Shown here: in pieces, positions 1,660 to 61,125 of the stretch
Numbering within the stretch: the stretch's first letter is position 1
How the letters are laid out: every line of letters begins with the position of its first letter
DNA from: Pristiophorus japonicus
Taxonomy: Eukaryota
Assembly: GCF_044704955.1 (NCBI RefSeq)
Contig: NC_091999.1
Coordinates: 10,478,001 to 10,542,000, forward strand
DNA: 64,000 bases
Reading direction: 5' to 3'
Program-made: the position numbers and the translations under genes
The notes under the pieces: generated by a model
Seen by the model: the letters and a program-made list of their open reading frames with translations, nothing else
Databases searched by the model: none
What the model was told of the DNA's origin: nothing

Positions 1660-1698
1660 CACACTGCTGAGGAGATTTAGTGTATCCGGAACAAAACT
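1660..1698 (+). other. 23-RSS of V pseudogene
   Basis: CACACTG-23 bp-AACAAAACT. Confidence 0.8.
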
Positions 1699-1929
1699 CA
1701 CAATGCCAGTTCCAGATAGAGTTCACCAGAGGGCACTCTCACACCGATAAACAATAATTCAACCTCCTGACTGACAGCAAAAAATACAACACTCAACAGG
1801 TACAGGTTAGGTCCACTGGTGGAATTTTATTAGTTTGTGATTTAACCTCGCATTTATAATAAAATTAACTTTTGCAATCTTGGCTGTGGAGACTTTACTC
1901 CCCTGTTATAGTTAAAAACATCTAAGAGT

Positions 1930-9552: not shown

Positions 9553-9595
9553 ATGGGAATCCTGTTTGTTTTCACGCTGTGTATCTGTTTCCCAC
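9553..9595 (+). CDS. NAR-TCR V leader exon
   Basis: ATG..MGILFVFTLCICFP + C|GTGAGT phase-1 donor; splices in frame to ttccag|GC at 9742. Confidence 0.92.
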
Positions 9596-9741
9596 GTGAG
9601 TACCGTTCCGACAAATCGACATTGTGTGGATTTAATATAAAGCTGCCGTGTCCATCCGAATTGCAGACTTTATCTGTGTTTTAGCCCCGTTGTGTGTTTC
9701 GGCTGAAATGATCCATTAAACACTCTCCATTTAATTTCCAG

Positions 9742-10029
9742 GCTCTTTCACTAACTCAGTGGTACAGACCCCGCCAGCGGTGACCAGACAGGAGTGTCAG
9801 TCCCTCACCATCACCTGCGTTTTCTATGGTGGATTTTTTGCTCGTCCTTTAACTGGTGGGCAATTCTTCAGACAAACGCAGACCGGGACAGAGTGGGAGC
9901 GGATCTCGAGCGACGAGCGATTTGTTATGAGGACGAATGAGGCTGAAAAGACATTTTGGATGGAAATTAGGGATGTGCGAGTTGAAGACAGTGCCACCTA
10001 TTACTGCAAAGCCCAGTACAAATATACTA
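9742..10029 (+). CDS. NTCRV: NAR-TCR V segment (IgNAR-like V of doubly rearranging TCR delta), open frame
   Basis: RSFTNSVVQTPPAVTRQECQSLTITC..FFRQ..EWERISSDERFV..EIRDVRVEDSATYYCKAQYKYT. Only 62 aa between the canonical Cys (71 in the V at 61.1 kb), consistent with the NAR CDR2 deletion. Ends YCKA, has an extra FR1 Cys, and is followed by its own D and J. Confidence 0.93.
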
Positions 10030-10067
10030 CACAGTGATGGGCCTTGGCTTCCCGCGATACAAAAACT
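10030..10067 (+). other. V RSS (22-bp spacer, 23-type)
   Basis: CACAGTG-22 bp-ACAAAAACT. Confidence 0.95.
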
Positions 10068-10377: not shown

Positions 10378-10446
10378 AGATTTTATGCTGACGTGAAGCA
10401 GTGTGTTGACTGGAACAACACAGTGGAAGAGACCTGAGCAAAAACC
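10378..10446 (+). other. NAR-TCR D segment (TTGACTGGAACAA, 10406-10418) with 12-RSS on both sides
   Basis: AGATTTTAT-12-CAGTGTG | D | CACAGTG-12-GCAAAAACC. Confidence 0.9.
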
Positions 10447-10760
10447 TGTACACAATTAAATCATAAATTCCCCGGGCCCGGATCCTGAATATTAGCATTG
10501 ATCATATTGTCACCGTAATTTGGTTTAATTTCAGTGTGATTCCTACATTCAGTTATCTTTCTCTGATATTTTCTCCATTTATATGAAGCATCTAGCGCCG
10601 GCCCGTGTTCCTGGGCCATTTTACTACGAGCTCAGAATCTCACAAGGAACAGATTGAACCGACGGGGTATGTGGAAAACAAATTGTGATTATTGATCACT
10701 GGAATAATTGGGCAGCGCCTAATGTCTGGTGTTGTCTGGCCGGCAGATTGAGGTGTCGCT

Positions 10761-10799
10761 GGTTCTTGTGTCGGGGTGACTGAGAGCTGTGTCACTGTG
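10761..10799 (-). other. J 23-RSS
   Basis: On + strand GGTTCTTGT-23 bp-CACTGTG. Confidence 0.93.
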
Positions 10800-10869
10800 C
10801 TGGATACTAATACCAACTGGAAGTATGATTATGTGGATGGATCCGGGACTGTGGTGACTGTCACAGCCG
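10800..10869 (+). CDS. NAR-TCR J segment
   Basis: LDTNTNWKYDYVDGSGTVVTVTA + G|GTAAGT phase-1 donor; GxG-TVVTV motif like IgNAR J. Confidence 0.93.
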
Positions 10870-16345: not shown

Positions 16346-17532
16346 TCGACATGGATAAGTTGGAGCAGATAGCGTTGATGCAATTAAGCGGATCTTGGAA
16401 AACACATTATAAGAAAGGAATGGATGAACACGGGGTTCAGATTGGGAAGAGGTAATTAGAGTGGGAGGAGCCTCGTATGGAGTATAAACACCAACATAGA
16501 TTCGTTGCGTCGAATGGCCTGTTCCGTTTGTGCAGATTATGTTCAATGTAAAACTCAGTGAAAACTCCGCCTGCATCAAATAGGAGAGAATCATCCAATG
16601 GTCTGAAGGAATTGCAATTGTCAGAGAGTTTGAAGAGCCAGTTCCCGCCGAGTAACAGTAAAACCACTGCGGAAGCTGCACAGACTGAAACCAACCGACA
16701 ACTGATAGACTTTGAGACAAGTTCTCAGGCTGGCAAGAAAACCACAAATAACACAAAGTGAGCGACCCAGATGCAGATATAAAATGAAACTAACTGTAAA
16801 TAATTCAACTTAAATTTAAATGGCGTAATAGTTGCCCCATTGACGGAAGAAAAGTCAAACATAGTTCAAGGCAGGCAGGAGCTCCTGTTAAGAGTAAGGC
16901 TAGATTAAATACTTTGTCTTCGACCCACAACATTTAAGTTTGGCTCAATCGGTGCTGATGAACCACCATGCTTTTTTTTGGATCTTGCTGTGCTCATTGA
17001 CATGATACAGCCGTGTTCCTCTGGGTCAATCATCATTGTAAGATGATTGTCTCAGTGTGGAGGAGAAGGAGAATTACAATGTTACCTCAGGTTTATCTTG
17101 CACCAAGAAAAATCGAAAGATAAATTTAATAGCATTTATATCATCATACAGCACAGAAGGAGGTCATTCGACCCAGTGTGTATATGCCGGTTCGTGAAGG
17201 TGCTATAACTTGGTCCCTGCCCTTTGCTCTTTCCTCATACCCCTTCAAATGTTTTCTTTTCCAGTATTGATCCAATTATACTTTGAAAGCTACAGTTGAA
17301 TATGGTTTCAGCACCTTTTCAGGCAGTGCATTCCTGTTCATAACAACTCGTCGTTTAAAAAACGTTCTCAACTCCCTCTCTTATTCTTTCGACATTGACA
17401 GCGAATACATTTGCAACAGGCTTTAAATGAAAATAGCATTAACGTGAGAGGCAGAACTTTTCCTGTGATTGACCACTTTCCCTGGGTAAAAAGCAGCCAA
17501 ATAAATAACATTCTTCCATTTTTATCCTACAG

Positions 17533-17838
17533 CTTCCATTTCCACAGTGTCCCAGATTCCGCCTCTACAAACTTCTACTCTCGGTGACACCATTACTTTA
17601 AGCTGTGAATATCCAGGTGCCTGTCAGCACACAGTACACTGGTACTGTCAGTCCCCAGGGCAGGGTCCGAAATACCTGCTTCAGAGACACACTTCAGGAG
17701 AGCGAAATAAAGAAAACGCTGCCAGTGGCCGAATTTCTGCTTCGGTCGATCCTGTAGAGAAAATCAGTCGGTTAAACATCGCAAAACTTCAACTAAGTGA
17801 CAGCTCTGTGTATTATTGTGCACTGAGTCGGCGCACAG
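17533..17838 (+). CDS. STCRV: Leaderless supporting TCR-delta V of NAR-TCR, open frame
   Basis: The phase-1 acceptor matches the J donor at 10869. ASISTVSQIPPLQTSTLGDTITLSCEYPGACQHTVHWYCQSPGQGPKYLLQ..LSDSSVYYCALSRRT has a non-canonical CDR1 Cys. No leader exon recognisable upstream. Confidence 0.92.
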
Positions 17839-17877
17839 CACAGTGATACACAGTCCGGAGAGAGCCGTACAAAAACC
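17839..17877 (+). other. Perfect 23-RSS of supporting V-delta
   Basis: CACAGTG-23 bp-ACAAAAACC. Confidence 0.97.
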
Positions 17878-18023
17878 TGATCATGTTCGGGATTACAGAT
17901 ACGCAGTCATACAGAACATGGAAAGAGCAGTATTAAAGCTGAATATGGTGGGTATTACATATACATAGTGACACAAAGCACGGATAGAATTCGCAAGCAA
18001 GAACATAGTGTGGATTACAGACA

Positions 18024-18062
18024 CACAGTGATTCAGAGCAGGGAGAGAGCCGTACAAAAACC
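18024..18062 (+). other. Second perfect 23-RSS with no adjacent coding segment
   Basis: CACAGTG-attcagagcagggagagagccgt(23)-ACAAAAACC. Confidence 0.95.
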
Positions 18063-18301
18063 TGATCATGGTGGGGAATATAGATACACAATCATACACA
18101 GCATGGAGAGAGTCATACTAATATCTGAATATTGTGGGGATTACAGGCACACTATGGCACAGAGCACGATGAAGTACAAAAATCTGGACATGGTCGGGAT
18201 TACAGACACAGAGTGCTGCAGAGCAGAGGGAGATCCGCATTAAAACCTGTTCATGGTGGGTATTACAGTTACGCACTGAATCAGTAAATAGAGGGAAGAT
18301 G

Positions 18302-18610
18302 AGAACATAATAAGTAGGAGCAGGAGTAGGAAATACGACCCCTCGAGCCTTCTCAGACATTTAATACAATCATGGCTGATCCGATCATGGACTCAGGTCC
18401 ACTTCCCTGCCCGGTCCCCACAATCCCTTATTCCCTTATCTGTTAAGAGCAAGGAGTCGGAGGGAGGGAGGGGGAGTGCAATGAGAGGGAGAGAGCAGCG
18501 GAAAGAAAGTGGAGCGGGAGAACACGGGGAGGGGGAGAGCAAAGGGAGGCGGATAGCTGGAGCGGGGACGTGGAGAGCCAGGGGAGGTGAAGAGCAGGGG
18601 GAATGGACAG
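18302..18610 (-). mobile_element. CR1 3'-end fragment plus GA-rich tract inserted in the RSS array
   Basis: gaacataa..taggagcaggagtagg..atcatggctgatc..cccttattccctta matches other CR1 3' ends. Confidence 0.75.
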
Positions 18611-18907
18611 CAGGGAGAGTCGGTACAAAAACCGGAAAATGTTGTGATGACAGACACACATTGATAAAGGGCACCGAGCGAGTTCAAAAACCTACACATA
18701 GTGGGGATTACAGACACACAGTGATACAGTGCACCGAGAGAGTTCACAAAGCTGGACGTGGTGGAGATCACAGGCATAGCGATGCAGAGCACGGAGGTAG
18801 CTGTTGAAAAACCTAATCATGGTGGAAAGAGCGATGAGTTCCTGCATATTTTAGGGATCTCGGAACGAGATTAAGAAATATCACCTCAAAGGTAATTAAC
18901 TCCGGAT

Positions 18908-21900
18908 TTCCCTTTCACAAATCCATGCTAAATTGGACCTATCATGTCACCTCTTTCCAAATGCGCTGCTATGACATCCTTAATTAATGATTTGATCATT
19001 TTACCCACTACCGATGTCAGGCTGACCAGGCTATAATTCCCTGTTTTCTCTCTCCCTCCTTTTTTAAAACGTGGGGTTACATTGGCGACCCTCCACTCCA
19101 TAGGAACTGATCCAGAGTCTATGGAATGTTGGAAAATGACTGTCAATGCATTCGCTATTTCCAAGGCCATCTCCTTAAGTACTCTGGGAAGCTGACCATC
19201 AGGCCCTGGGGATTTATGGGCCTTCAATCCCATCAATTTCCCCAACACAATTTCCTGACGAATAAGGATTTCCCTCAGTTCCTCCTACTTACTAGACGCT
19301 CTGACCCCTTTTATATCCGGAAGGTTGTTTGTGTTCTCCTTAGTGAATACCGAACCATAGTACTTGTTCAATTGGTCTGCCATTTCTTTTTTCCCCGTTA
19401 TGACTTCCCCTGATTCTGACTGCAGGGGCCTACGTTTGTCTTTACTAACCTGTTTCTCTTTACATATCTGTAGAAGCTTTTGCAGTCCGTCTTAATGTTC
19501 CCTGCAAGCTTCCTCTCATAAGCTATTTGCCCTGCCCTAATCAAACCCTTTGTCCTCATCTGATGAGATCTAAATTTCTCGCAGTTCCCGGTTTCGCTGA
19601 TATTTCTGGCCAATTTGTATGCCACTTCCTTGGCTTTAATACTATCCCTGATTTCCCTTGATAGCCACGGTTGAGCCACCTTCCCTTTTTTTATTTTTAC
19701 GACAGAGAGGGGTGTACAATTGTTGTAGTTCATCCATGCGGTCTCTAAATGTCTGCCATTGCTCATTCACTGTCAACTCCTTAAGTATCATTCGCCAATC
19801 TATCCTAGCCAATTCACGCCTCATAACTTCAAAGTTACCCTCCTTTAAGTTCTGGGCCATGGTCTCTGAATTAACTGTTTCATTCTCCTTCCTAATGTAG
19901 AATTCCACCATATTATGGTCACTCTTCCCCAAGGAGCCTTGCACAACGACGTTGCTAATTTATCCTCTCTCATTTCACAACATCCAGTCTAAGATGGCCT
20001 CCTGCCTTGTTGGTTCCTAGACATATTGGTCCAGAAAACCATCCCTTATGGATTCCAGGAAATCCTCCTCCACCGTATTGCTTCATGTTTGGTTAGTCAA
20101 TCTGTATGCATATTAAAGTCACCCATGATAACTGCTGCAACTTTATTGCATGCACCCCTAATTTCCTGTTTGATGCCCTCCCCAACATGACCACTACTAT
20201 TTGGAGGTCTGTACACAACTCCCACTAACGTTTTTTGCCCTTTGGTGTTCCGCAGCTCTACCCATATAGATTCCACATCATCCAAGCTAATGTCCTTCCC
20301 AACTATTGCATTAATCTCCTATTTAACCAGCAATGCTACCCCACCTCCTTTTCCTTTTATTCTATCCTTCCTGAATGTTGAATACCCTTGGCTGTTGAGT
20401 TCCCAGCCCTGATCATCCTGGAGCCATGTCTCTGTCATGCCAATCACATCATAACTGTTACCAACTGTTTGCACAGTTAATTCATCCACCTTATTACGGA
20501 TACTCCTTGCATTAAGACACAAAGCCTTCAGGCTAGATTTTTTAACACCTTTTGTCCTTCTGAATTATGATGTAGTGTGGCCCTTTTTGTTTCTTGCCTT
20601 TGGTTACTCGGCCATCCACTATTGCTTTTTAACTTTCTACCATCTGATTCGGGCTCCATATTATTTTGCCCTGTCTCGCTGCATAGGTTCCCATCTCCCT
20701 GCCATATTAGTTTAAACACTCCCGAACTGCATCAGCAAATGTTACCCCCAGGACATCAGTTCCAGTCCTGCCCAAGTGCAGACCATTACTTTTGTACAGG
20801 TCCCAGTTCCCCCAGAACTGTTTCCAATATCCCAGGAATTTGAATCCTTCCCTCTTGCACCACAGCTCAAGCCACGTATTTATTCTAACTATCCTGCTCC
20901 CTCTACTCTGATTAGCACGTGGCACTGATAGCAATCCAGAAATTACTAATTTTGATATTCTACTTTTTAATTTAACTCAGAGCTCCCTAAATTCAGCTTG
21001 TAGGACCTCTTCCCGCTTCTTACCTATAACGTTGGTACCAACATGTACCACGACAACTGGCTGTTCACCCTCCTCTCCAGAATTATTTGCAGCCGCTCTG
21101 AGACATCCTTGACCCTTGCACCAGGGAGGCAACATAAAATCCTGGAGTCCTGGTTGCGGCTGCAAAAATTCCTCCTATTCCCCTTACAATAGTGTCCCCT
21201 ATTACTTTACCTCTCCCACTCTTTTTCCCGCAGTTCTGTGCAGCAGAGCCACCCATGGTGCCATCAACCTGGCTGTTGGTGCCTTCCCCTGTTAAGTCAT
21301 CTCCCCCAAATTATCCAAAACGGTATATCTGTTTTGGAGGGAGATGACTGCAGGGGACTCCTGCACTATCTTCCTGCTCTTGCCTTGTCTCTTGGTCACC
21401 CATTCACTATCTGTCCTCACCCTTACATGCGGTGTGACCAACTCACTAAATGTGTTATCCACAACATTCTCAGCATTGCGCATGCTCCAGAGTGAGTCCA
21501 TCCGCAGCTCCAATGCCGTCATGCAGTCTGTCAGGAGCAGCAGCTGGACACACTTCCCGCACCCATAGTAGTCAGGGACACTGGAAGTGTACCTGCCTTC
21601 TCACATGGCACAGGAGGTGCATGACATGGGTCCGAGCTCTCCTGCCATGACTTAACCCTTACATTAATTTACTTACTAAAATGTATTTAAACACCAAACA
21701 GCTACTGAGTAGTTCACAGCCAAGTAAATCAATCTAAAAGTCAGTCTAAAAGAGAGTTATACTTACCAGTCGTACAGTCAACCACTTACCAGCTTGGCTG
21801 TGACGTCACCTCTAGATTTCACAGCCTTCTATTTTTGTCTGCAGCTGGTTGGGCTGGTCTCTGGGCCTCCGTCTCCTACTCTTGCACTCCTTATCAGCTG

Positions 21901-44070: not shown

Positions 44071-44231
44071 CTTGCAGAGAAGGATGGGTTCCATTCAACT
44101 GTCTGTAAGTGTCAGCCGTCGCTCAATCAGTCTCATTCACGTTTCTGAGTCAGAGGGTTGAGGCACCGTCTGCGGCAGTTTTATTTCACTGAGGTTTCCG
44201 TACAGTGAGAGATGAGGTTTATAACACTGTG

Positions 44232-48440: not shown

Positions 48441-48997
48441 GTAAAAATGCGAGATCTATTTCATCATTCACTCAATGACAAATAGTTTTTTCTTGAGTCG
48501 CTCGATAACAGATGTCTTTACTTAGCTCTTGGGTTGGACTGTGGTTTGGTTAGGTTTTTGCTCGAGTCGAGCAATTTTGAAGTGCCGTAATCCTTAGTCC
48601 GCAGCAGTAGGCAGGTTTGTCTTCAGTCGCTGCTGCAGAAATTGAAAAAGGGAAACTTGATATCGATTGAAATGACGAGCATCGAATTCTCCTTTCACAA
48701 AACATGCAACCTTTCCCCTGGTGATATCATGATACAAGATAAACTGCAAAGCCTACTTCGGGTACAGCTCGTACCAGTAACAATTCGGATCGTCCGAACT
48801 GCTGTTGTAATCACAGTTCAATTGAGACTTATCTGCTTCATATACATTCATCTCATATTGAGGCTGCATTACTAAACTGCATTGGATTTTATCTGCGCAA
48901 AATGATTTAAATCATTACTTAATATCCTTCTTAATTATGAAAATTCACACCAGCAGAGGGAACATGTAGCACAACATACCTATTACAATTGACATCA

Positions 48998-50871
48998 GGA
49001 CTAAAAACGGATAGTAAAAGCTTTTACAGATATATAAAACGGAAAAGACTGACTAAAGTAAATGTTGGTCCCTTAGAAGATGAGAAGGGGGATTTAATAA
49101 TGGGAAATGTGGAAATGGCTGAGATCTTAAACAATTATTTTGCTTCGGTCTTCTCAGTGGAAGACACAGAAACCATGCCAGAAATTGCTGGTCACAGGAA
49201 TGTGGGAAGGGAGGACCTGGAGACAATCACTATCACTAGGAAGGTAGTGCTGGACAGGCTAATGGGACTCAAGGTAGACAAGTCCCTGGTCCTGATGAAA
49301 TGCATCCCAGGGTATTAAAAGAGATGGCGGAAGATATAGCAGATGCATTCGTTATAATCTATCAAAATTATCTGGATTCTGGGCATGTACCAGCGGATTG
49401 GAAAGCAGCTAATGTAACGCCACTGTTTAAAAAAGGGGGCAGACAAAAGGCAAGTAACTATAAGCCGGTTTGTTTAACATCTGTAGTGGGAAAATTCTTG
49501 AATCTAACATTAAGAAAGAAATAGCGGGACATCTAGATAGCAATAGTGCAATCAAGCAGATGCAGCATGGATTCATGAAGGGGAAATCATGTTTAACTAA
49601 TTTACTGGAATTCTTTGAGGATATAACGAGAATGATGGATAGATGTGTACCGATGGATGTGGTGTATTTAGATTTTCAAAAGGCATTCGATAAGGTGCCA
49701 CACAAAAGGTTACTGCAGAATAGAAAGGTACGCGGGGTCAGTGGAAATGTATTAGCATGGATCGAGAATTGGCTGGCGAACAGAAAGCAGAGAGTCGGGA
49801 TAAATGGGTCATTTTCGGGTTGGAAATCGGTGGTTAGTGGTGTGCCACAGGGATCGGTGCTGGGACCACAACTGTTTGCAATATACATAGATGACCTGGA
49901 AGAGAGGACAGTGTGTAATGTAACAAAATGTGGAGATGACACTAAGGTTAGTGGGAAAGCGGGTTGTGTAGAGGACACAGAGAGGCTGCAAAGAGATTTA
50001 GATAGGTTAAGCAAATAGGCTAAGGTTTGGCAGATGGAATACGATGTCGGAAATTGTGAGGTCATCCACCTTGGGTAAAAAAACACAAAAAGGGAATATT
50101 ATTCGAATGGGGAGAAATTACAACATGCTGCGGCGCAGAGGTACCTGGGGTCCTTGTGCATGAATCCCAAAAAGTTAGTTTTCAGGTGCAGCAGGTAATC
50201 AGGAAGTCGAATGGAATGTTGGCCTTCATTGCGAGAGGGATGGAGTACAAAACCAGGGAGGTCCTTCTGCAACTGTATCGGGTATTGGTGAGGGCGCACC
50301 TTGAGTGCTGCATGCAGTTTTGATCAATGTACTTAAGGAAGGATATACTGGCTTTGGAGCGGGTACAGAGACGATTCACTAGGTTGATTCCGAAGATGAG
50401 GGGGTTACCTGCTGATGATAGATTGAGTAGACTTGGTCTTTACTCGTTGCAGATCAGAAGGATGAGGGGTGATCTACTAGAAACATTTTAAATAATGAAT
50501 GGGATAGACAAGATAGAGGCAGAGAGGTTGTATCCACTGGTAGGGGAGACTAGAACTAGGGTGCACAGCCTCAAAAAACGGAAGAGCCAATTTAAAACCG
50601 AGTTGAGAAGGAATTTCTTCTCCCAGAGGGTTGTGAATCTGTGATATTCTCTGCCCAAGGAAGCAGTTGATGCTAGCTCATTGAATGTATTCAAGTCACA
50701 GATAGATAGATTTTTAACTAATAAGGGAATTAAGGGTTATGGGGAGCGGGCGGCTAAGTGGAGCTGAGTCCTCGGCCAGATCAGCCATGATCTTGTTGAA
50801 TGGCGGAGCAGGCACGAGGGTCTAGATGGCCTACTCCTATTCCTAATTCTTATGATCTTATGTTCTTATGT
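48998..50871 (+). mobile_element. CR1, 5'-truncated, inserted in the V leader intron
   Basis: ORFs 48989-50018 with HGFMKGKSCLTNLLEFF, DFQKAFDKVPH, SGVPQGSVLGP; (ttcttatg)n tail. Confidence 0.95.
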
Positions 50872-51112
50872 AATACACAGCAGCATAGGCAACACATTTT
50901 ACTAATTACCTATTATACAATGGCCATGAGGTGCATTCATACCAGCATAGGGAACACATTGTACTAATTACCTATTACAATGGCCATCCGAAGCTTACAC
51001 CCGAGCATAGAAAACACATTTTACTAATGACCTATTATGCAAATGCGATCAGGAGCATACACACCAGCAGAGGGAACACATTTTACAATTTACCAATTGC
51101 AATAGACATCAG
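50872..51112 (-). repeat. About 60-bp tandem repeat of leader 3' end + splice donor (4 units; a fifth at about 48945-49000)
   Basis: On + strand cacaccagca(g/t)agggaacacattttactaattacctattacaatgg(c/a)catc units. Confidence 0.85.
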
Positions 51113-51845
51113 TAGCTGCTGAACCAGTGTCATCACAAAAATGCTGCCAATATGATCCGGACTTCCGTTCTCACCTGGATAAACAGAATCAATAATTCAA
51201 CCTGAGAGTCGTGGGGAAATTCTTAAACTTGCAACAAAAAAAGCACGCAACCAGAGCAGATGAGGTACTCTGCAGGAATGACGTTAGTTAGTGAGTGCAA
51301 TGCACAATTATCACAAATTCATCTGTGGCACCTTAACTCGTGGCGGTCTGCAATAATGTGCAGCCCATTTCACTACACCGAAGTTATTGTTCCAGACCGT
51401 TTGATCGAAGCCTGTACACAGGGTTTATTTGATCAGAGTATGTTGCTGGGTCAGAGATAGTTCATACACAATGCACAGATTTCACAAGGTAGTGACTGTG
51501 CTGTTCCAAACAAGTCCCAAGCACAGAGCTCCTCCTTTTCCATTGCCCTTCTGATTGTTTCTTTAATTCTTCCACCATTAAACCTCAGCTTCCGGGTTAC
51601 AATAACCAGAAAGGAGTTTAATTTCCAACAAAGGTCTCCAAAGGCGGAACTATTCCCGTATAAGCTCATTGACTGTAGCCCAGTTCTTGTTGATTCCCTT
51701 CACTGGTAGACAGCTCATAGCACCAGTGGGAACAAAAGGAAATGTGGTGAGAGCATCCTGATACATGATGGCAGATTATTGAGGCTGGTGATTCGAACGG
51801 ATGTTTGCAAATATCCAACCACCTTTTACGGAGCATACAGCGAGA

Positions 51846-61086: not shown

Positions 61087-61125
61087 AGTTTTTGTACAGC
61101 TCCAGCCCTGCACCGTGCCTCTGTG
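61087..61125 (-). other. 23-RSS
   Basis: CACAGAG-23 bp-ACAAAAACT. Confidence 0.92.

What the first reader, a model, noticed from the sequence alone, without database searches (positions are those of the whole stretch)
17839..18825. The 23-RSS of the NAR-TCR supporting V-delta is amplified into a tandem RSS array with a second perfect RSS
Seen: the genuine RSS (17839-17877) is unit 1 of about 12 head-to-tail units of 58-63 bp, each heptamer + spacer + nonamer + about 24-bp linker. Unit 4 (18024-18062) is a perfect CACAGTG-23-ACAAAAACC with no coding segment. Others keep CAC heptamers or A-tract nonamers (18657 and 18717 with 20-bp spacers; 18775 with 23). Known: V segments normally carry a single RSS, RAG1 binds nonamers, and cleavage needs CAC. 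Inference: the array could be a RAG-loading platform that raises usage of a V with no leader or promoter of its own, or a decoy. It could also be a retry system. Joining at unit 4 is non-productive (in-frame TGA at 17844-17846) but leaves the true RSS intact for a later join if a 12-RSS partner remains. Neutral minisatellite expansion is also possible. I know of no description of such an array but cannot search.
Basis: partly seen in the sequence, partly recalled or inferred. Interest (0 to 1): 0.9.

Follow-up and report, generated by a model that had tools for sequence, protein, structure and literature searches.

The report
RSS-derived minisatellite behind shark V-delta
The recombination signal behind a shark T-cell-receptor V gene has been copied head to tail about eleven times into a decaying minisatellite. 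One extra copy is still a perfect signal, but nothing in the sequence shows that the array was selected for a function.

Summary
A real tandem array starts exactly at the heptamer of the 23-RSS (17839) of a leaderless V-delta that lies downstream of a NAR-TCR L-V-D-J. I count 11 units of 59-63 bp. Seven are contiguous (17839-18271). One is split by a 5'-truncated high-copy retroelement fragment and a G-rich 17-bp expansion (18272-18656). Three more run to about 18836. Units fall into three types arranged as an ABC trimer (185 bp). Unit 4 (18024-18062) is a second perfect CACAGTG-23-ACAAAAACC.

Heptamer and nonamer columns are no better conserved across units than spacer or linker columns. Only U1 versus U4 hints at constraint (0/16 versus 9/47 differences, P=0.06). 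The unit is low-copy, absent elsewhere in the window and absent behind four ordinary V segments.

Short-read contigs 5-9% diverged from this locus cover the V end, the RSS and units 1-4, so paralogous copies carry the array. The scan had already found such an array on other DNA of this genome (s1-876490, about 304 kb away).

Best reading: a neutral minisatellite seeded by the RSS and inherited with duplicated NAR-TCR cassettes. Unit 4 is a by-product that should compete with the true RSS and give non-productive joins. Platform, decoy and retry functions are unsupported but untested.

The parts
9553..10067 (+). Context: NAR-TCR leader exon (9553-9595), V exon (9742-10029) and its RSS (10030-10067, 22-bp spacer)
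   Evidence: Read directly. It has a Cys in the a-b loop and F in place of the WYRK tryptophan. Pfam V-set E=5e-7. RSS found.
10406..10869 (+). Context: NAR-TCR D (~10406-10418) with its 3' 12-RSS (10419-10446), the J 23-RSS (10761-10799) and J coding (10800-10869) ending in a phase-1 splice donor
   Evidence: The J ends ...ACAGCCG|gtaagt.
17533..17838 (+). Leaderless supporting V-delta exon with a phase-1 acceptor after the cag at 17530-17532. It has a CDR1 Cys (CEYPGAC) and a YYC.
   Evidence: Pfam V-set E=6e-14. One 65%-identical homologue, P0001, also has a CDR1 Cys.
17839..17877 (+). Genuine 23-RSS (CACAGTG-23-ACAAAAACC), which is unit 1 (type A) of the array
17839..18271 (+). Array part 1: units U1-U7 (63, 62, 60, 63, 63, 59, 63 bp) in the order A B C A B C A, giving a 185-bp trimeric higher-order repeat
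   Evidence: TRF, alignment, identity matrix and clustering.
18024..18062 (+). Unit 4: a second perfect CACAGTG-23-ACAAAAACC with no coding segment. It is 85% identical to unit 1.
18272..18295 (+). 5' part of unit 8 (CGCACTG...), broken by an insertion
   Evidence: Read. Compared with the unit consensus.
18295..18446 (-). 5'-truncated 3' end of a high-copy retroelement inserted into unit 8
   Evidence: 75% identical to the reverse complement of the LINE 3' end at 50714-50865, with 6 further copies in the window. Read depth is 1e5-5e6, against 5-170 for the array.
18447..18615 (+). G/A-rich stretch with period about 17. It looks like an expansion of the spacer core GAGCAGGGAGAG of the split unit.
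   Evidence: TRF rows 18506-18553 and 18560-18600. Read. The derivation from the spacer is my inference.
18597..18836 (+). Array part 2: the 3' part of U8 (nonamer ACAAAAACC), then U9 (CACATTG-20-TCAAAAACC), U10 (CACAGTG-20-TCACAAAGC) and U11 (CATAGCG-23-TGAAAAACC)

Best explanation
This is a minisatellite seeded by the V gene's own 23-RSS. A 63-bp piece (the 39-bp RSS plus the next 24 bp) was duplicated head to tail, starting at the coding/heptamer border. The cause was probably replication slippage or unequal exchange, perhaps at the short ACAG repeats at both ends of the piece. The monomers diverged into three types (A, B, C). The ABC trimer (185 bp) was then amplified again, which placed a fresh copy of the true RSS 185 bp downstream (unit 4). 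Later a retroelement fragment landed in unit 8, the spacer core of that unit expanded into a G-rich 17-bp repeat, and the whole NAR-TCR cassette including the array was duplicated within the locus. Only unit 1 is kept by selection, because it serves the V. The other units drift and lose CAC, spacer length or nonamer. Unit 4 is still perfect because it is the youngest A copy, or was recently converted from unit 1. By sequence, RAG should be able to cut it. Joins there would carry 185 bp of array with an in-frame TGA and be non-productive. Shown: the anatomy, the unit types, the lack of RSS-specific conservation, the low copy number and the presence at paralogues. Inferred: the order of events, the slippage mechanism and the consequences at unit 4.
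For: The tandem structure and 185-bp period are. Units cluster as A = U1, U4, U7; B = U2, U5; C = U3, U6, U9, U10.

RSS columns are not better conserved than other columns. Pairwise identity is 0.61 for RSS positions and 0.65 for the rest, the linker is the best conserved segment, and the RSS geometry ranks 49th of 63 circular shifts.

For U2-U5, U3-U6, U4-U7, U9-U10 and the others, differences fall on RSS positions as often as elsewhere, or more often (P 0.25-0.99). A-type units U7 (CAGAGTG) and U11 (CATAGCG) have lost CAC.

The array starts at the heptamer, with no similarity to the V end. It predates the retroelement insertion that splits U8.

Depth over the array is 5-174, like the V exon (27-111). 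Depth over the inserted element is 1e5-5e6.

Contigs with 9-14 mismatches cover 17738-17906, 17806-17951 and 17889-18044. Paralogous copies therefore carry the V end, the RSS and units 1-4.

Four ordinary V segments and the NAR V in the window have no array. There is no Rfam match, no unusual fold and no CTCF-like motif in the array.
Against: U1 and U4 are identical at all 16 heptamer and nonamer positions but differ at 9 of 47 others (one-sided P=0.058). The array, including a usable extra RSS, is reported at a second supporting V-delta (s1-876490, which I did not read). In this window it is found only behind the supporting V. Both facts would also fit a retained function. The left boundary coincides with the RAG cleavage site, which slippage does not specifically predict. 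No data on rearrangement, expression, other individuals or other species could be obtained.
Confidence: 0.75

Rival explanations
1. The array is a selected cis-element of NAR-TCR supporting V-delta genes. Its repeated nonamers and heptamers would concentrate RAG (a platform). Alternatively, the downstream perfect RSS would act as a decoy or damper, or allow a retry. Either would tune how often a leaderless V rearranges.
For: In this window the array lies only behind the supporting V. Paralogous copies carry it (s1-876490). U1 and U4 show 0/16 differences at RSS positions against 9/47 elsewhere (P=0.058). Varied nonamers can support RAG activity (PMC12711392).
Against: RSS positions are no better conserved than the rest across 11 units. 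Only 2 units are consensus RSSs. Six units have lost CAC or have 19-20-bp spacers. A retroelement and a G-rich expansion sit inside the array. Presence at paralogues is explained by block duplication at 5-9% divergence. A join at unit 4 is non-productive and uses up a partner RSS, so a 'retry' gives nothing that direct use of unit 1 would not.
Confidence: 0.12
2. The array is neutral in origin, but unit 4 is kept identical to unit 1 by recurrent gene conversion or unequal exchange within the array (concerted evolution), not by its youth.
For: Identity between trimer copies falls along the trimer: A pair 85%, B pair 73%, C pair 65%. Unit 4 matches unit 1 at every RSS position.
Against: At non-RSS positions the three pairs differ by similar amounts (19%, 23%, 30%). 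There is therefore no clear conversion tract, and nine differences between U1 and U4 remain.
Confidence: 0.08
3. It is a dispersed, transposon-borne satellite whose unit merely resembles an RSS and which landed next to the V. Alternatively, it is an assembly artefact.
For: Transposon fragments lie inside and beside the array. Another 62-bp array follows a LINE 3' end at 50873. No listed read piece spans the whole array.
Against: Depth over the units is like that of the V exon, not like a repeat family. There are no unit copies elsewhere in the window, and the 50873 array is unrelated. Unit 1 is the V's own RSS. Units differ by 15-50%, so collapse or false expansion is unlikely. Contigs with 0-2 mismatches tile 17765-17885, 17899-18041, 18100-18329, 18473-18586, 18593-18718 and 18696-18827.
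Confidence: 0.04

Closest known systems
Minisatellites with higher-order repeat structure (slippage or unequal-exchange arrays)
   Same: Head-to-tail units of about 60 bp, divergence into unit types, amplification of a multi-unit block (185 bp), interruption by a transposon and by a secondary microsatellite-like expansion, and inheritance with a segmental duplication.
   Different: The seed is a functional recombination signal, and the array begins exactly at the RAG cleavage border. The array therefore contains a second consensus RSS.
Non-coding or cryptic RSSs used by RAG (kappa-deleting element/RS, delta-Rec, cryptic RSSs; PMC12711392, PMC11153149)
   Same: Unit 4 is a consensus heptamer-23-nonamer without a coding segment, in the same orientation as a real V RSS inside an antigen-receptor locus. 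Units 5, 9 and 10 keep CAC and A-rich nonamer-like stretches.
   Different: Known examples are single sites, not tandem copies of a neighbouring V's RSS. No use by RAG is shown here.
RSS-derived minisatellite behind another V-delta of the same genome (scan note s1-876490, about 304 kb beyond this window, beside candidate supporting V-delta s1-876537)
   Same: About eight decayed head-to-tail RSS copies with one extra usable RSS behind a supporting-type V-delta. Contigs 5-9% diverged from this locus, laid, fit such a paralogue.
   Different: I could not read that locus, so unit-by-unit correspondence is untested.
CTCF-binding elements just downstream of V RSSs (mouse Igh; scan note s1-876491 for this genome)
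   Same: A cis-element directly behind a V RSS that could raise V usage. The V at 1660 has a CTCF-like motif 24 bp past its RSS.
   Different: No CTCF-like motif occurs in the array, even allowing 1 mismatch.

Membership tests
23-bp recombination signal sequence (for unit 4, 18024-18062) | Heptamer begins with CAC and matches CACAGTG | tested here: met
   CACAGTG, 0 mismatches.
23-bp recombination signal sequence (for unit 4, 18024-18062) | Spacer of 23 +/- 1 bp followed by an A-rich nonamer | tested here: met
   23-bp spacer, ACAAAAACC, 0 mismatches.
23-bp recombination signal sequence (for unit 4, 18024-18062) | Directly flanks a V, D or J coding segment | tested here: not met
   It is preceded by unit 3 of the array. 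Reading through from the V meets TGA at 17844-17846.
23-bp recombination signal sequence (for unit 4, 18024-18062) | Cut and joined by RAG in lymphocytes | not testable with these tools
   Only contigs of one DNA sample were available, with no RNA or thymus runs.
Functional RSS (other units U2, U3, U5-U11) | CAC heptamer with a correct 12 or 23 spacer and a nonamer | tested here: not met
   U2 CGC, U3 CAT, U7 CAG and U11 CAT have lost CAC. U6, U9 and U10 have 19-20-bp spacers. U8 has no heptamer. U5 (CACAATC-23-ACTAATATC) is at best a weak cryptic site.
Minisatellite with higher-order repeat | Head-to-tail units of 10-100 bp beyond chance | tested here: met
   TRF scores of 166 and 475. Junction motif has 3 matches against 0 in shuffles.
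Minisatellite with higher-order repeat | Units at a multi-unit distance are more alike than neighbours | tested here: met
   U1-U4 85% against U1-U2 69%. Clusters are A, B and C. TRF period 185 at 77% against period 63 at 67%.
Minisatellite with higher-order repeat | Copy number varies between individuals | not testable with these tools
   All holder runs come from one sample.
NAR-TCR supporting V-delta | V-set exon without a leader peptide, entered through a splice acceptor | tested here: met
   No leader-like exon in 17357-17532. Acceptor cag|CT is in phase 1. V-set E=6e-14. Criterion from PMC1845163.
NAR-TCR supporting V-delta | Conserved cysteine in CDR1 | tested here: met
   CEYPGACQ. Criterion from PMC1845163.
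NAR-TCR supporting V-delta | Lies downstream of a NAR-type L-V-D-J on the same strand, whose J ends in a compatible splice donor | tested here: met
   NAR V at 9742-10029 and J at 10800-10869 with a phase-1 donor.
NAR-TCR supporting V-delta | Found spliced to NAR VDJ in transcripts | not testable with these tools
   No RNA run holds the stretch.
Dispersed or transposon-borne satellite | High copy number across the genome | tested here: not met
   Depth is 5-174 over the units, against 1e5-5e6 over the inserted element. No other copies in the window.
CTCF-type element behind a V RSS | CTCF core motif | tested here: not met
   No match in 17839-18836 with up to 1 mismatch.

The most novel reading that the evidence does not exclude
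Supporting V-delta genes of NAR-TCR cassettes carry a retained tandem RSS array. Its second consensus RSS and A-rich nonamer repeats, spaced at a near-nucleosomal 185 bp, would tune RAG access to a V that has no promoter of its own. The array could hold RAG near the V. Alternatively, it could divert a fixed share of cuts into non-productive joins that unit 1 can later rescue.
Probability: 0.1. Interest if true: 0.75.

Novelty: new variant of a known kind. Interest (0 to 1): 0.35.

Why it matters
It is a natural construct with two identical consensus 23-RSSs in the same orientation, 185 bp apart, behind one V. It is followed by graded, decayed copies, and related versions exist at paralogous cassettes. 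If thymus data become available, it tests directly how RAG chooses between adjacent signals in a basal jawed vertebrate: proximal versus distal, scanning versus diffusion. It would also show how much a competing signal costs a V gene. I found no description of tandem RSS arrays in the searchable literature. As it stands it is a curiosity of repeat evolution in an antigen-receptor locus, not evidence for a new mechanism.

Tried and rejected
1. Dispersed satellite or relation to the 62-bp array at 50873: rejected. BLAST within the window finds no similarity, and read depth over the units is low.
2. Array extending into the V coding end: rejected (p=0.62).
3. Known RNA family or unusual single-strand structure: none. 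Rfam gave 0 hits at E<=1. The fold z-score was -0.13.
4. CTCF-like motif in the units: none.
5. Orthologues or paralogues by protein search. A scan of metagenome contigs with P0001 confirmed nothing. A DNA-pattern scan for the unit junction gave 4 unrelated microbial contigs, which are chance hits.
6. Expression or use: no RNA holders were found, and only contigs of one DNA sample were laid. No joints at 17838/17839 or 18023/18024 appeared, but germline-type contigs cannot show them.
7. Reading the paralogous array at +304 kb: not possible, because place look-ups are limited to the window.
9. The 2006 paper that first described NAR-TcR (PMC1458790) is not held.

Full report
**Observation**

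The region was read directly and scanned with Tandem Repeats Finder. TRF reports an array at 17839-18152 (period 63, 5 copies, 67% matches). It also reports 17839-18272 (period 185, 2.3 copies, 77% matches, score 475). I anchored units on the conserved GGGATTACAGACA motif and aligned them. This gives seven contiguous units, U1-U7 (17839-18271; 63, 62, 60, 63, 63, 59, 63 bp). An eighth unit has its 5' part at 18272-~18295 and its 3' part, with an intact ACAAAAACC, at ~18597-18656. Three more units start at 18657, 18717 and 18777 and end near 18836.

So there are 11 units rather than 'about 12'. Roughly 320 bp of the stated span are not RSS units.

- 18295-18446 is a 5'-truncated 3' end of a retroelement on the minus strand. 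It is 75% identical to the reverse complement of the LINE end at 50714-50865, with six further copies in the window.
- 18447-18615 is a G/A-rich stretch with a period of about 17. It looks like an expansion of the spacer core GAGCAGGGAGAG of the broken unit. That derivation is my inference.

A scan of both strands of the 64 kb finds perfect CACAGTG-23-ACAAAAACC only at 17839 and 18024. The linker-heptamer junction has 3 near matches, against none in 100 shuffles. The 63 bp upstream of 17839 have no similarity to the unit (p=0.62). The array therefore begins at the coding/heptamer border, and the genuine RSS is unit 1. The in-frame TGA at 17844-17846 is confirmed.

**Context**

The V at 17533-17838 is a V-set exon (Pfam E=6e-14) with an extra cysteine in CDR1 (CEYPGAC). 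It has no leader-like exon upstream, and its splice acceptor is in phase 1.

About 6.7 kb upstream on the same strand lies a NAR-type cassette:
- leader 9553-9595
- V exon 9742-10029, with a Cys in the a-b loop and F in place of the WYRK tryptophan
- RSS 10030-10067
- D at about 10406-10418, with a 12-RSS at 10419-10446
- J 23-RSS 10761-10799
- J 10800-10869, ending in a phase-1 donor

These are the features that define NAR-TcR V and its associated TcR-delta V in PMC1845163.

**What the array is**

The units fall into three types (identity matrix, clustering). Type A is U1, U4 and U7, with U11 nearest to them. Type B is U2 and U5. Type C is U3, U6, U9 and U10, all with a 3-4-bp shorter spacer. 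The order A B C A B C A (B, broken) C C A explains the 185-bp period. The second perfect RSS is the A unit of the second trimer, 85% identical to U1.

Across all units, heptamer and nonamer columns are not better conserved than the rest. Mean pairwise identity is 0.57 for the heptamer, 0.62 for the spacer, 0.65 for the nonamer and 0.68 for the linker. The real RSS geometry ranks 49th of 63 circular shifts.

Pair by pair, differences fall on RSS positions as often as elsewhere or more often:
- U2-U5: 6/16 at RSS positions against 11/47 elsewhere
- U3-U6: 9/16 against 13/44
- U4-U7: 3/16 against 11/47

The one exception is U1-U4, with 0/16 against 9/47 (one-sided P=0.058). U1 is constrained by its own function, so only the U4 lineage is informative. 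With about 10% change per lineage at the other positions, the chance that 16 positions stay unchanged is roughly 0.15-0.2. This hint is weak.

Apart from U1 and U4, no unit is a good signal. U2, U3, U7 and U11 have lost CAC. U6, U9 and U10 have 19-20-bp spacers. U8 has no heptamer. U5 (CACAATC-23-ACTAATATC) is at best a weak cryptic site. Many non-consensus nonamers can support RAG activity (PMC12711392), so weak use of such units cannot be excluded.

**Copy number and paralogues**

Four runs of one sample hold the stretch. Their contigs were laid on 17300-19000. Depth over the units is 5-174, similar to the V exon (27-111). The inserted element and the flanking transposons reach 1e5-5e6. The unit is therefore not a dispersed satellite.

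Contigs with 0-2 mismatches tile 17765-17885, 17899-18041, 18100-18329, 18473-18586, 18593-18718 and 18696-18827. These may come from the sample that was assembled, so they are not independent proof. However, units that differ by 15-50% are not prone to assembly artefacts.

Other contigs with 9-14 mismatches (5-9% divergence) cover 17738-17906, 17765-17906, 17806-17951 and 17889-18044. These span the V end, the RSS and units 1-4. Two contigs over the same stretch carry different numbers of mismatches, which suggests more than one such copy. Depth drops to single-copy level over U6-U7.

This fits the scan's earlier notes. An 'RSS-derived minisatellite' behind a V-delta lies about 304 kb beyond this window (s1-876490). 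It sits beside a candidate supporting V-delta (s1-876537). Its follow-up agent also found about eight decayed copies, one extra usable RSS and no evidence of selection. I could not read that locus.

In this window, the four ordinary V segments (RSSs at 1660+, 59783+, 44231- and 61125-) and the NAR V have no array. No unit copies exist elsewhere in the window, and the 62-bp array at 50873 is unrelated.

**How it most likely arose and works**

The most economical history has five steps.
1. A 63-bp piece (RSS plus 24 bp) was duplicated in tandem. This possibly happened through the short ACAG repeats at both ends of the piece (inference).
2. The monomers diverged into types A, B and C.
3. The ABC trimer was amplified by unequal exchange.
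4. A retroelement inserted into U8 and a spacer-core microsatellite expanded there.
5. The NAR-TCR cassette was duplicated as a block, array included.

Selection maintains only U1. U4 remains perfect either because it is the youngest A copy or because it was converted from U1.

From established knowledge of RAG, a consensus 23-RSS in the same orientation 185 bp downstream should compete with U1. RAG needs CAC, a 12 or 23 spacer and a nonamer. In mouse, it uses convergent cryptic signals that it meets while scanning from a recombination centre (PMC11153149, PMC13190342). Under scanning from a downstream D/J centre, U4 would be met first.

Joins at U4 would retain 17839-18023 with the stop codon and be non-productive. 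U1 could still join later to any remaining 12-RSS. It offers no gain over having no second signal. All of this is inference from mouse data. No data on use could be obtained.

**Other checks**

There is no Rfam family at E<=1. The single-strand fold is not unusual (z=-0.13). There is no CTCF-like motif in the array.

Protein and pattern searches for orthologous loci failed. The metagenome scans gave nothing or chance hits.

Full-text searches for tandem, duplicated or arrayed RSSs found no description. The papers on shark TCR and Ig loci that I opened do not mention one.

**Verdict**

The feature is real, and I found no description of it in the literature I could search. It is best explained as a neutral, RSS-seeded minisatellite with higher-order structure, inherited by paralogous NAR-TCR cassettes. 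The functional readings (platform, decoy, retry) are not excluded, and I give them about 10-12%. They have no positive support beyond a P=0.06 hint at one unit pair and the array's presence at paralogues. The scan had already found the same kind of array on other DNA of this genome (s1-876490). This report adds the trimer structure, the conservation test, the copy-number evidence and the link to paralogous copies.

Noticed in passing
window 1660-1736 (+): The V segment with its RSS at 1660-1699 has a CTCF-like motif (TCACCAGAGGGCAC) at 1723-1736, starting 24 bp past the RSS. This is the same arrangement as in scan note s1-876491. The distance equals the 24-bp linker of the array unit, which may be coincidence.
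   Followed up: partly
window 50847-51117 (+), also 48943-48998: A 62/122-bp tandem array directly follows the (TTCTTATG)n tail of a LINE 3' end. A related stretch lies at 48943-48998. Both carry the CTCF-like CCAGCAGAGGGAAC (48950, 51064). The array is unrelated in sequence to the RSS array.
   Followed up: partly
window 17849-17877 (+): The spacer of the genuine RSS contains a second heptamer-like CACAGTC, 13 bp from the same nonamer. This is a nested 12/13-RSS-like site. Unit 6 has CACAGAG-11-ACAAAAATC at 18158-18184.
   Followed up: no
window 18447-18615 (+): A G/A-rich repeat with a period of about 17 inside the split unit 8. It appears to be an expansion of the unit's own spacer core (GAGCAGGGAGAG), a repeat within a repeat.
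   Followed up: partly
window 44193-44231 (-) and 61087-61125 (-): Two V segments with 23-RSSs lie on the minus strand, opposite to the V segments at 1660, 17839 and 59783. Some V segments here would have to rearrange by inversion.
   Followed up: no
window 10030-10067 (+) and 10380-10446 (+): The NAR-TCR V RSS has a 22-bp spacer and the nonamer ACAAAAACT. The D at about 10406-10418 has a good 3' 12-RSS, but only a poor nonamer on its 5' side (heptamer CAGTGTG).
   Followed up: no
P0001 (protein from a 1197-bp public contig): This was the only database relative of the supporting V (65% identity). It is an open reading frame with the same CDR1 cysteine context (CEYSGICQ) and no leader, cut at the contig end before YYC. 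It is presumably host DNA of another cartilaginous fish in an environmental data set.
   Followed up: partly
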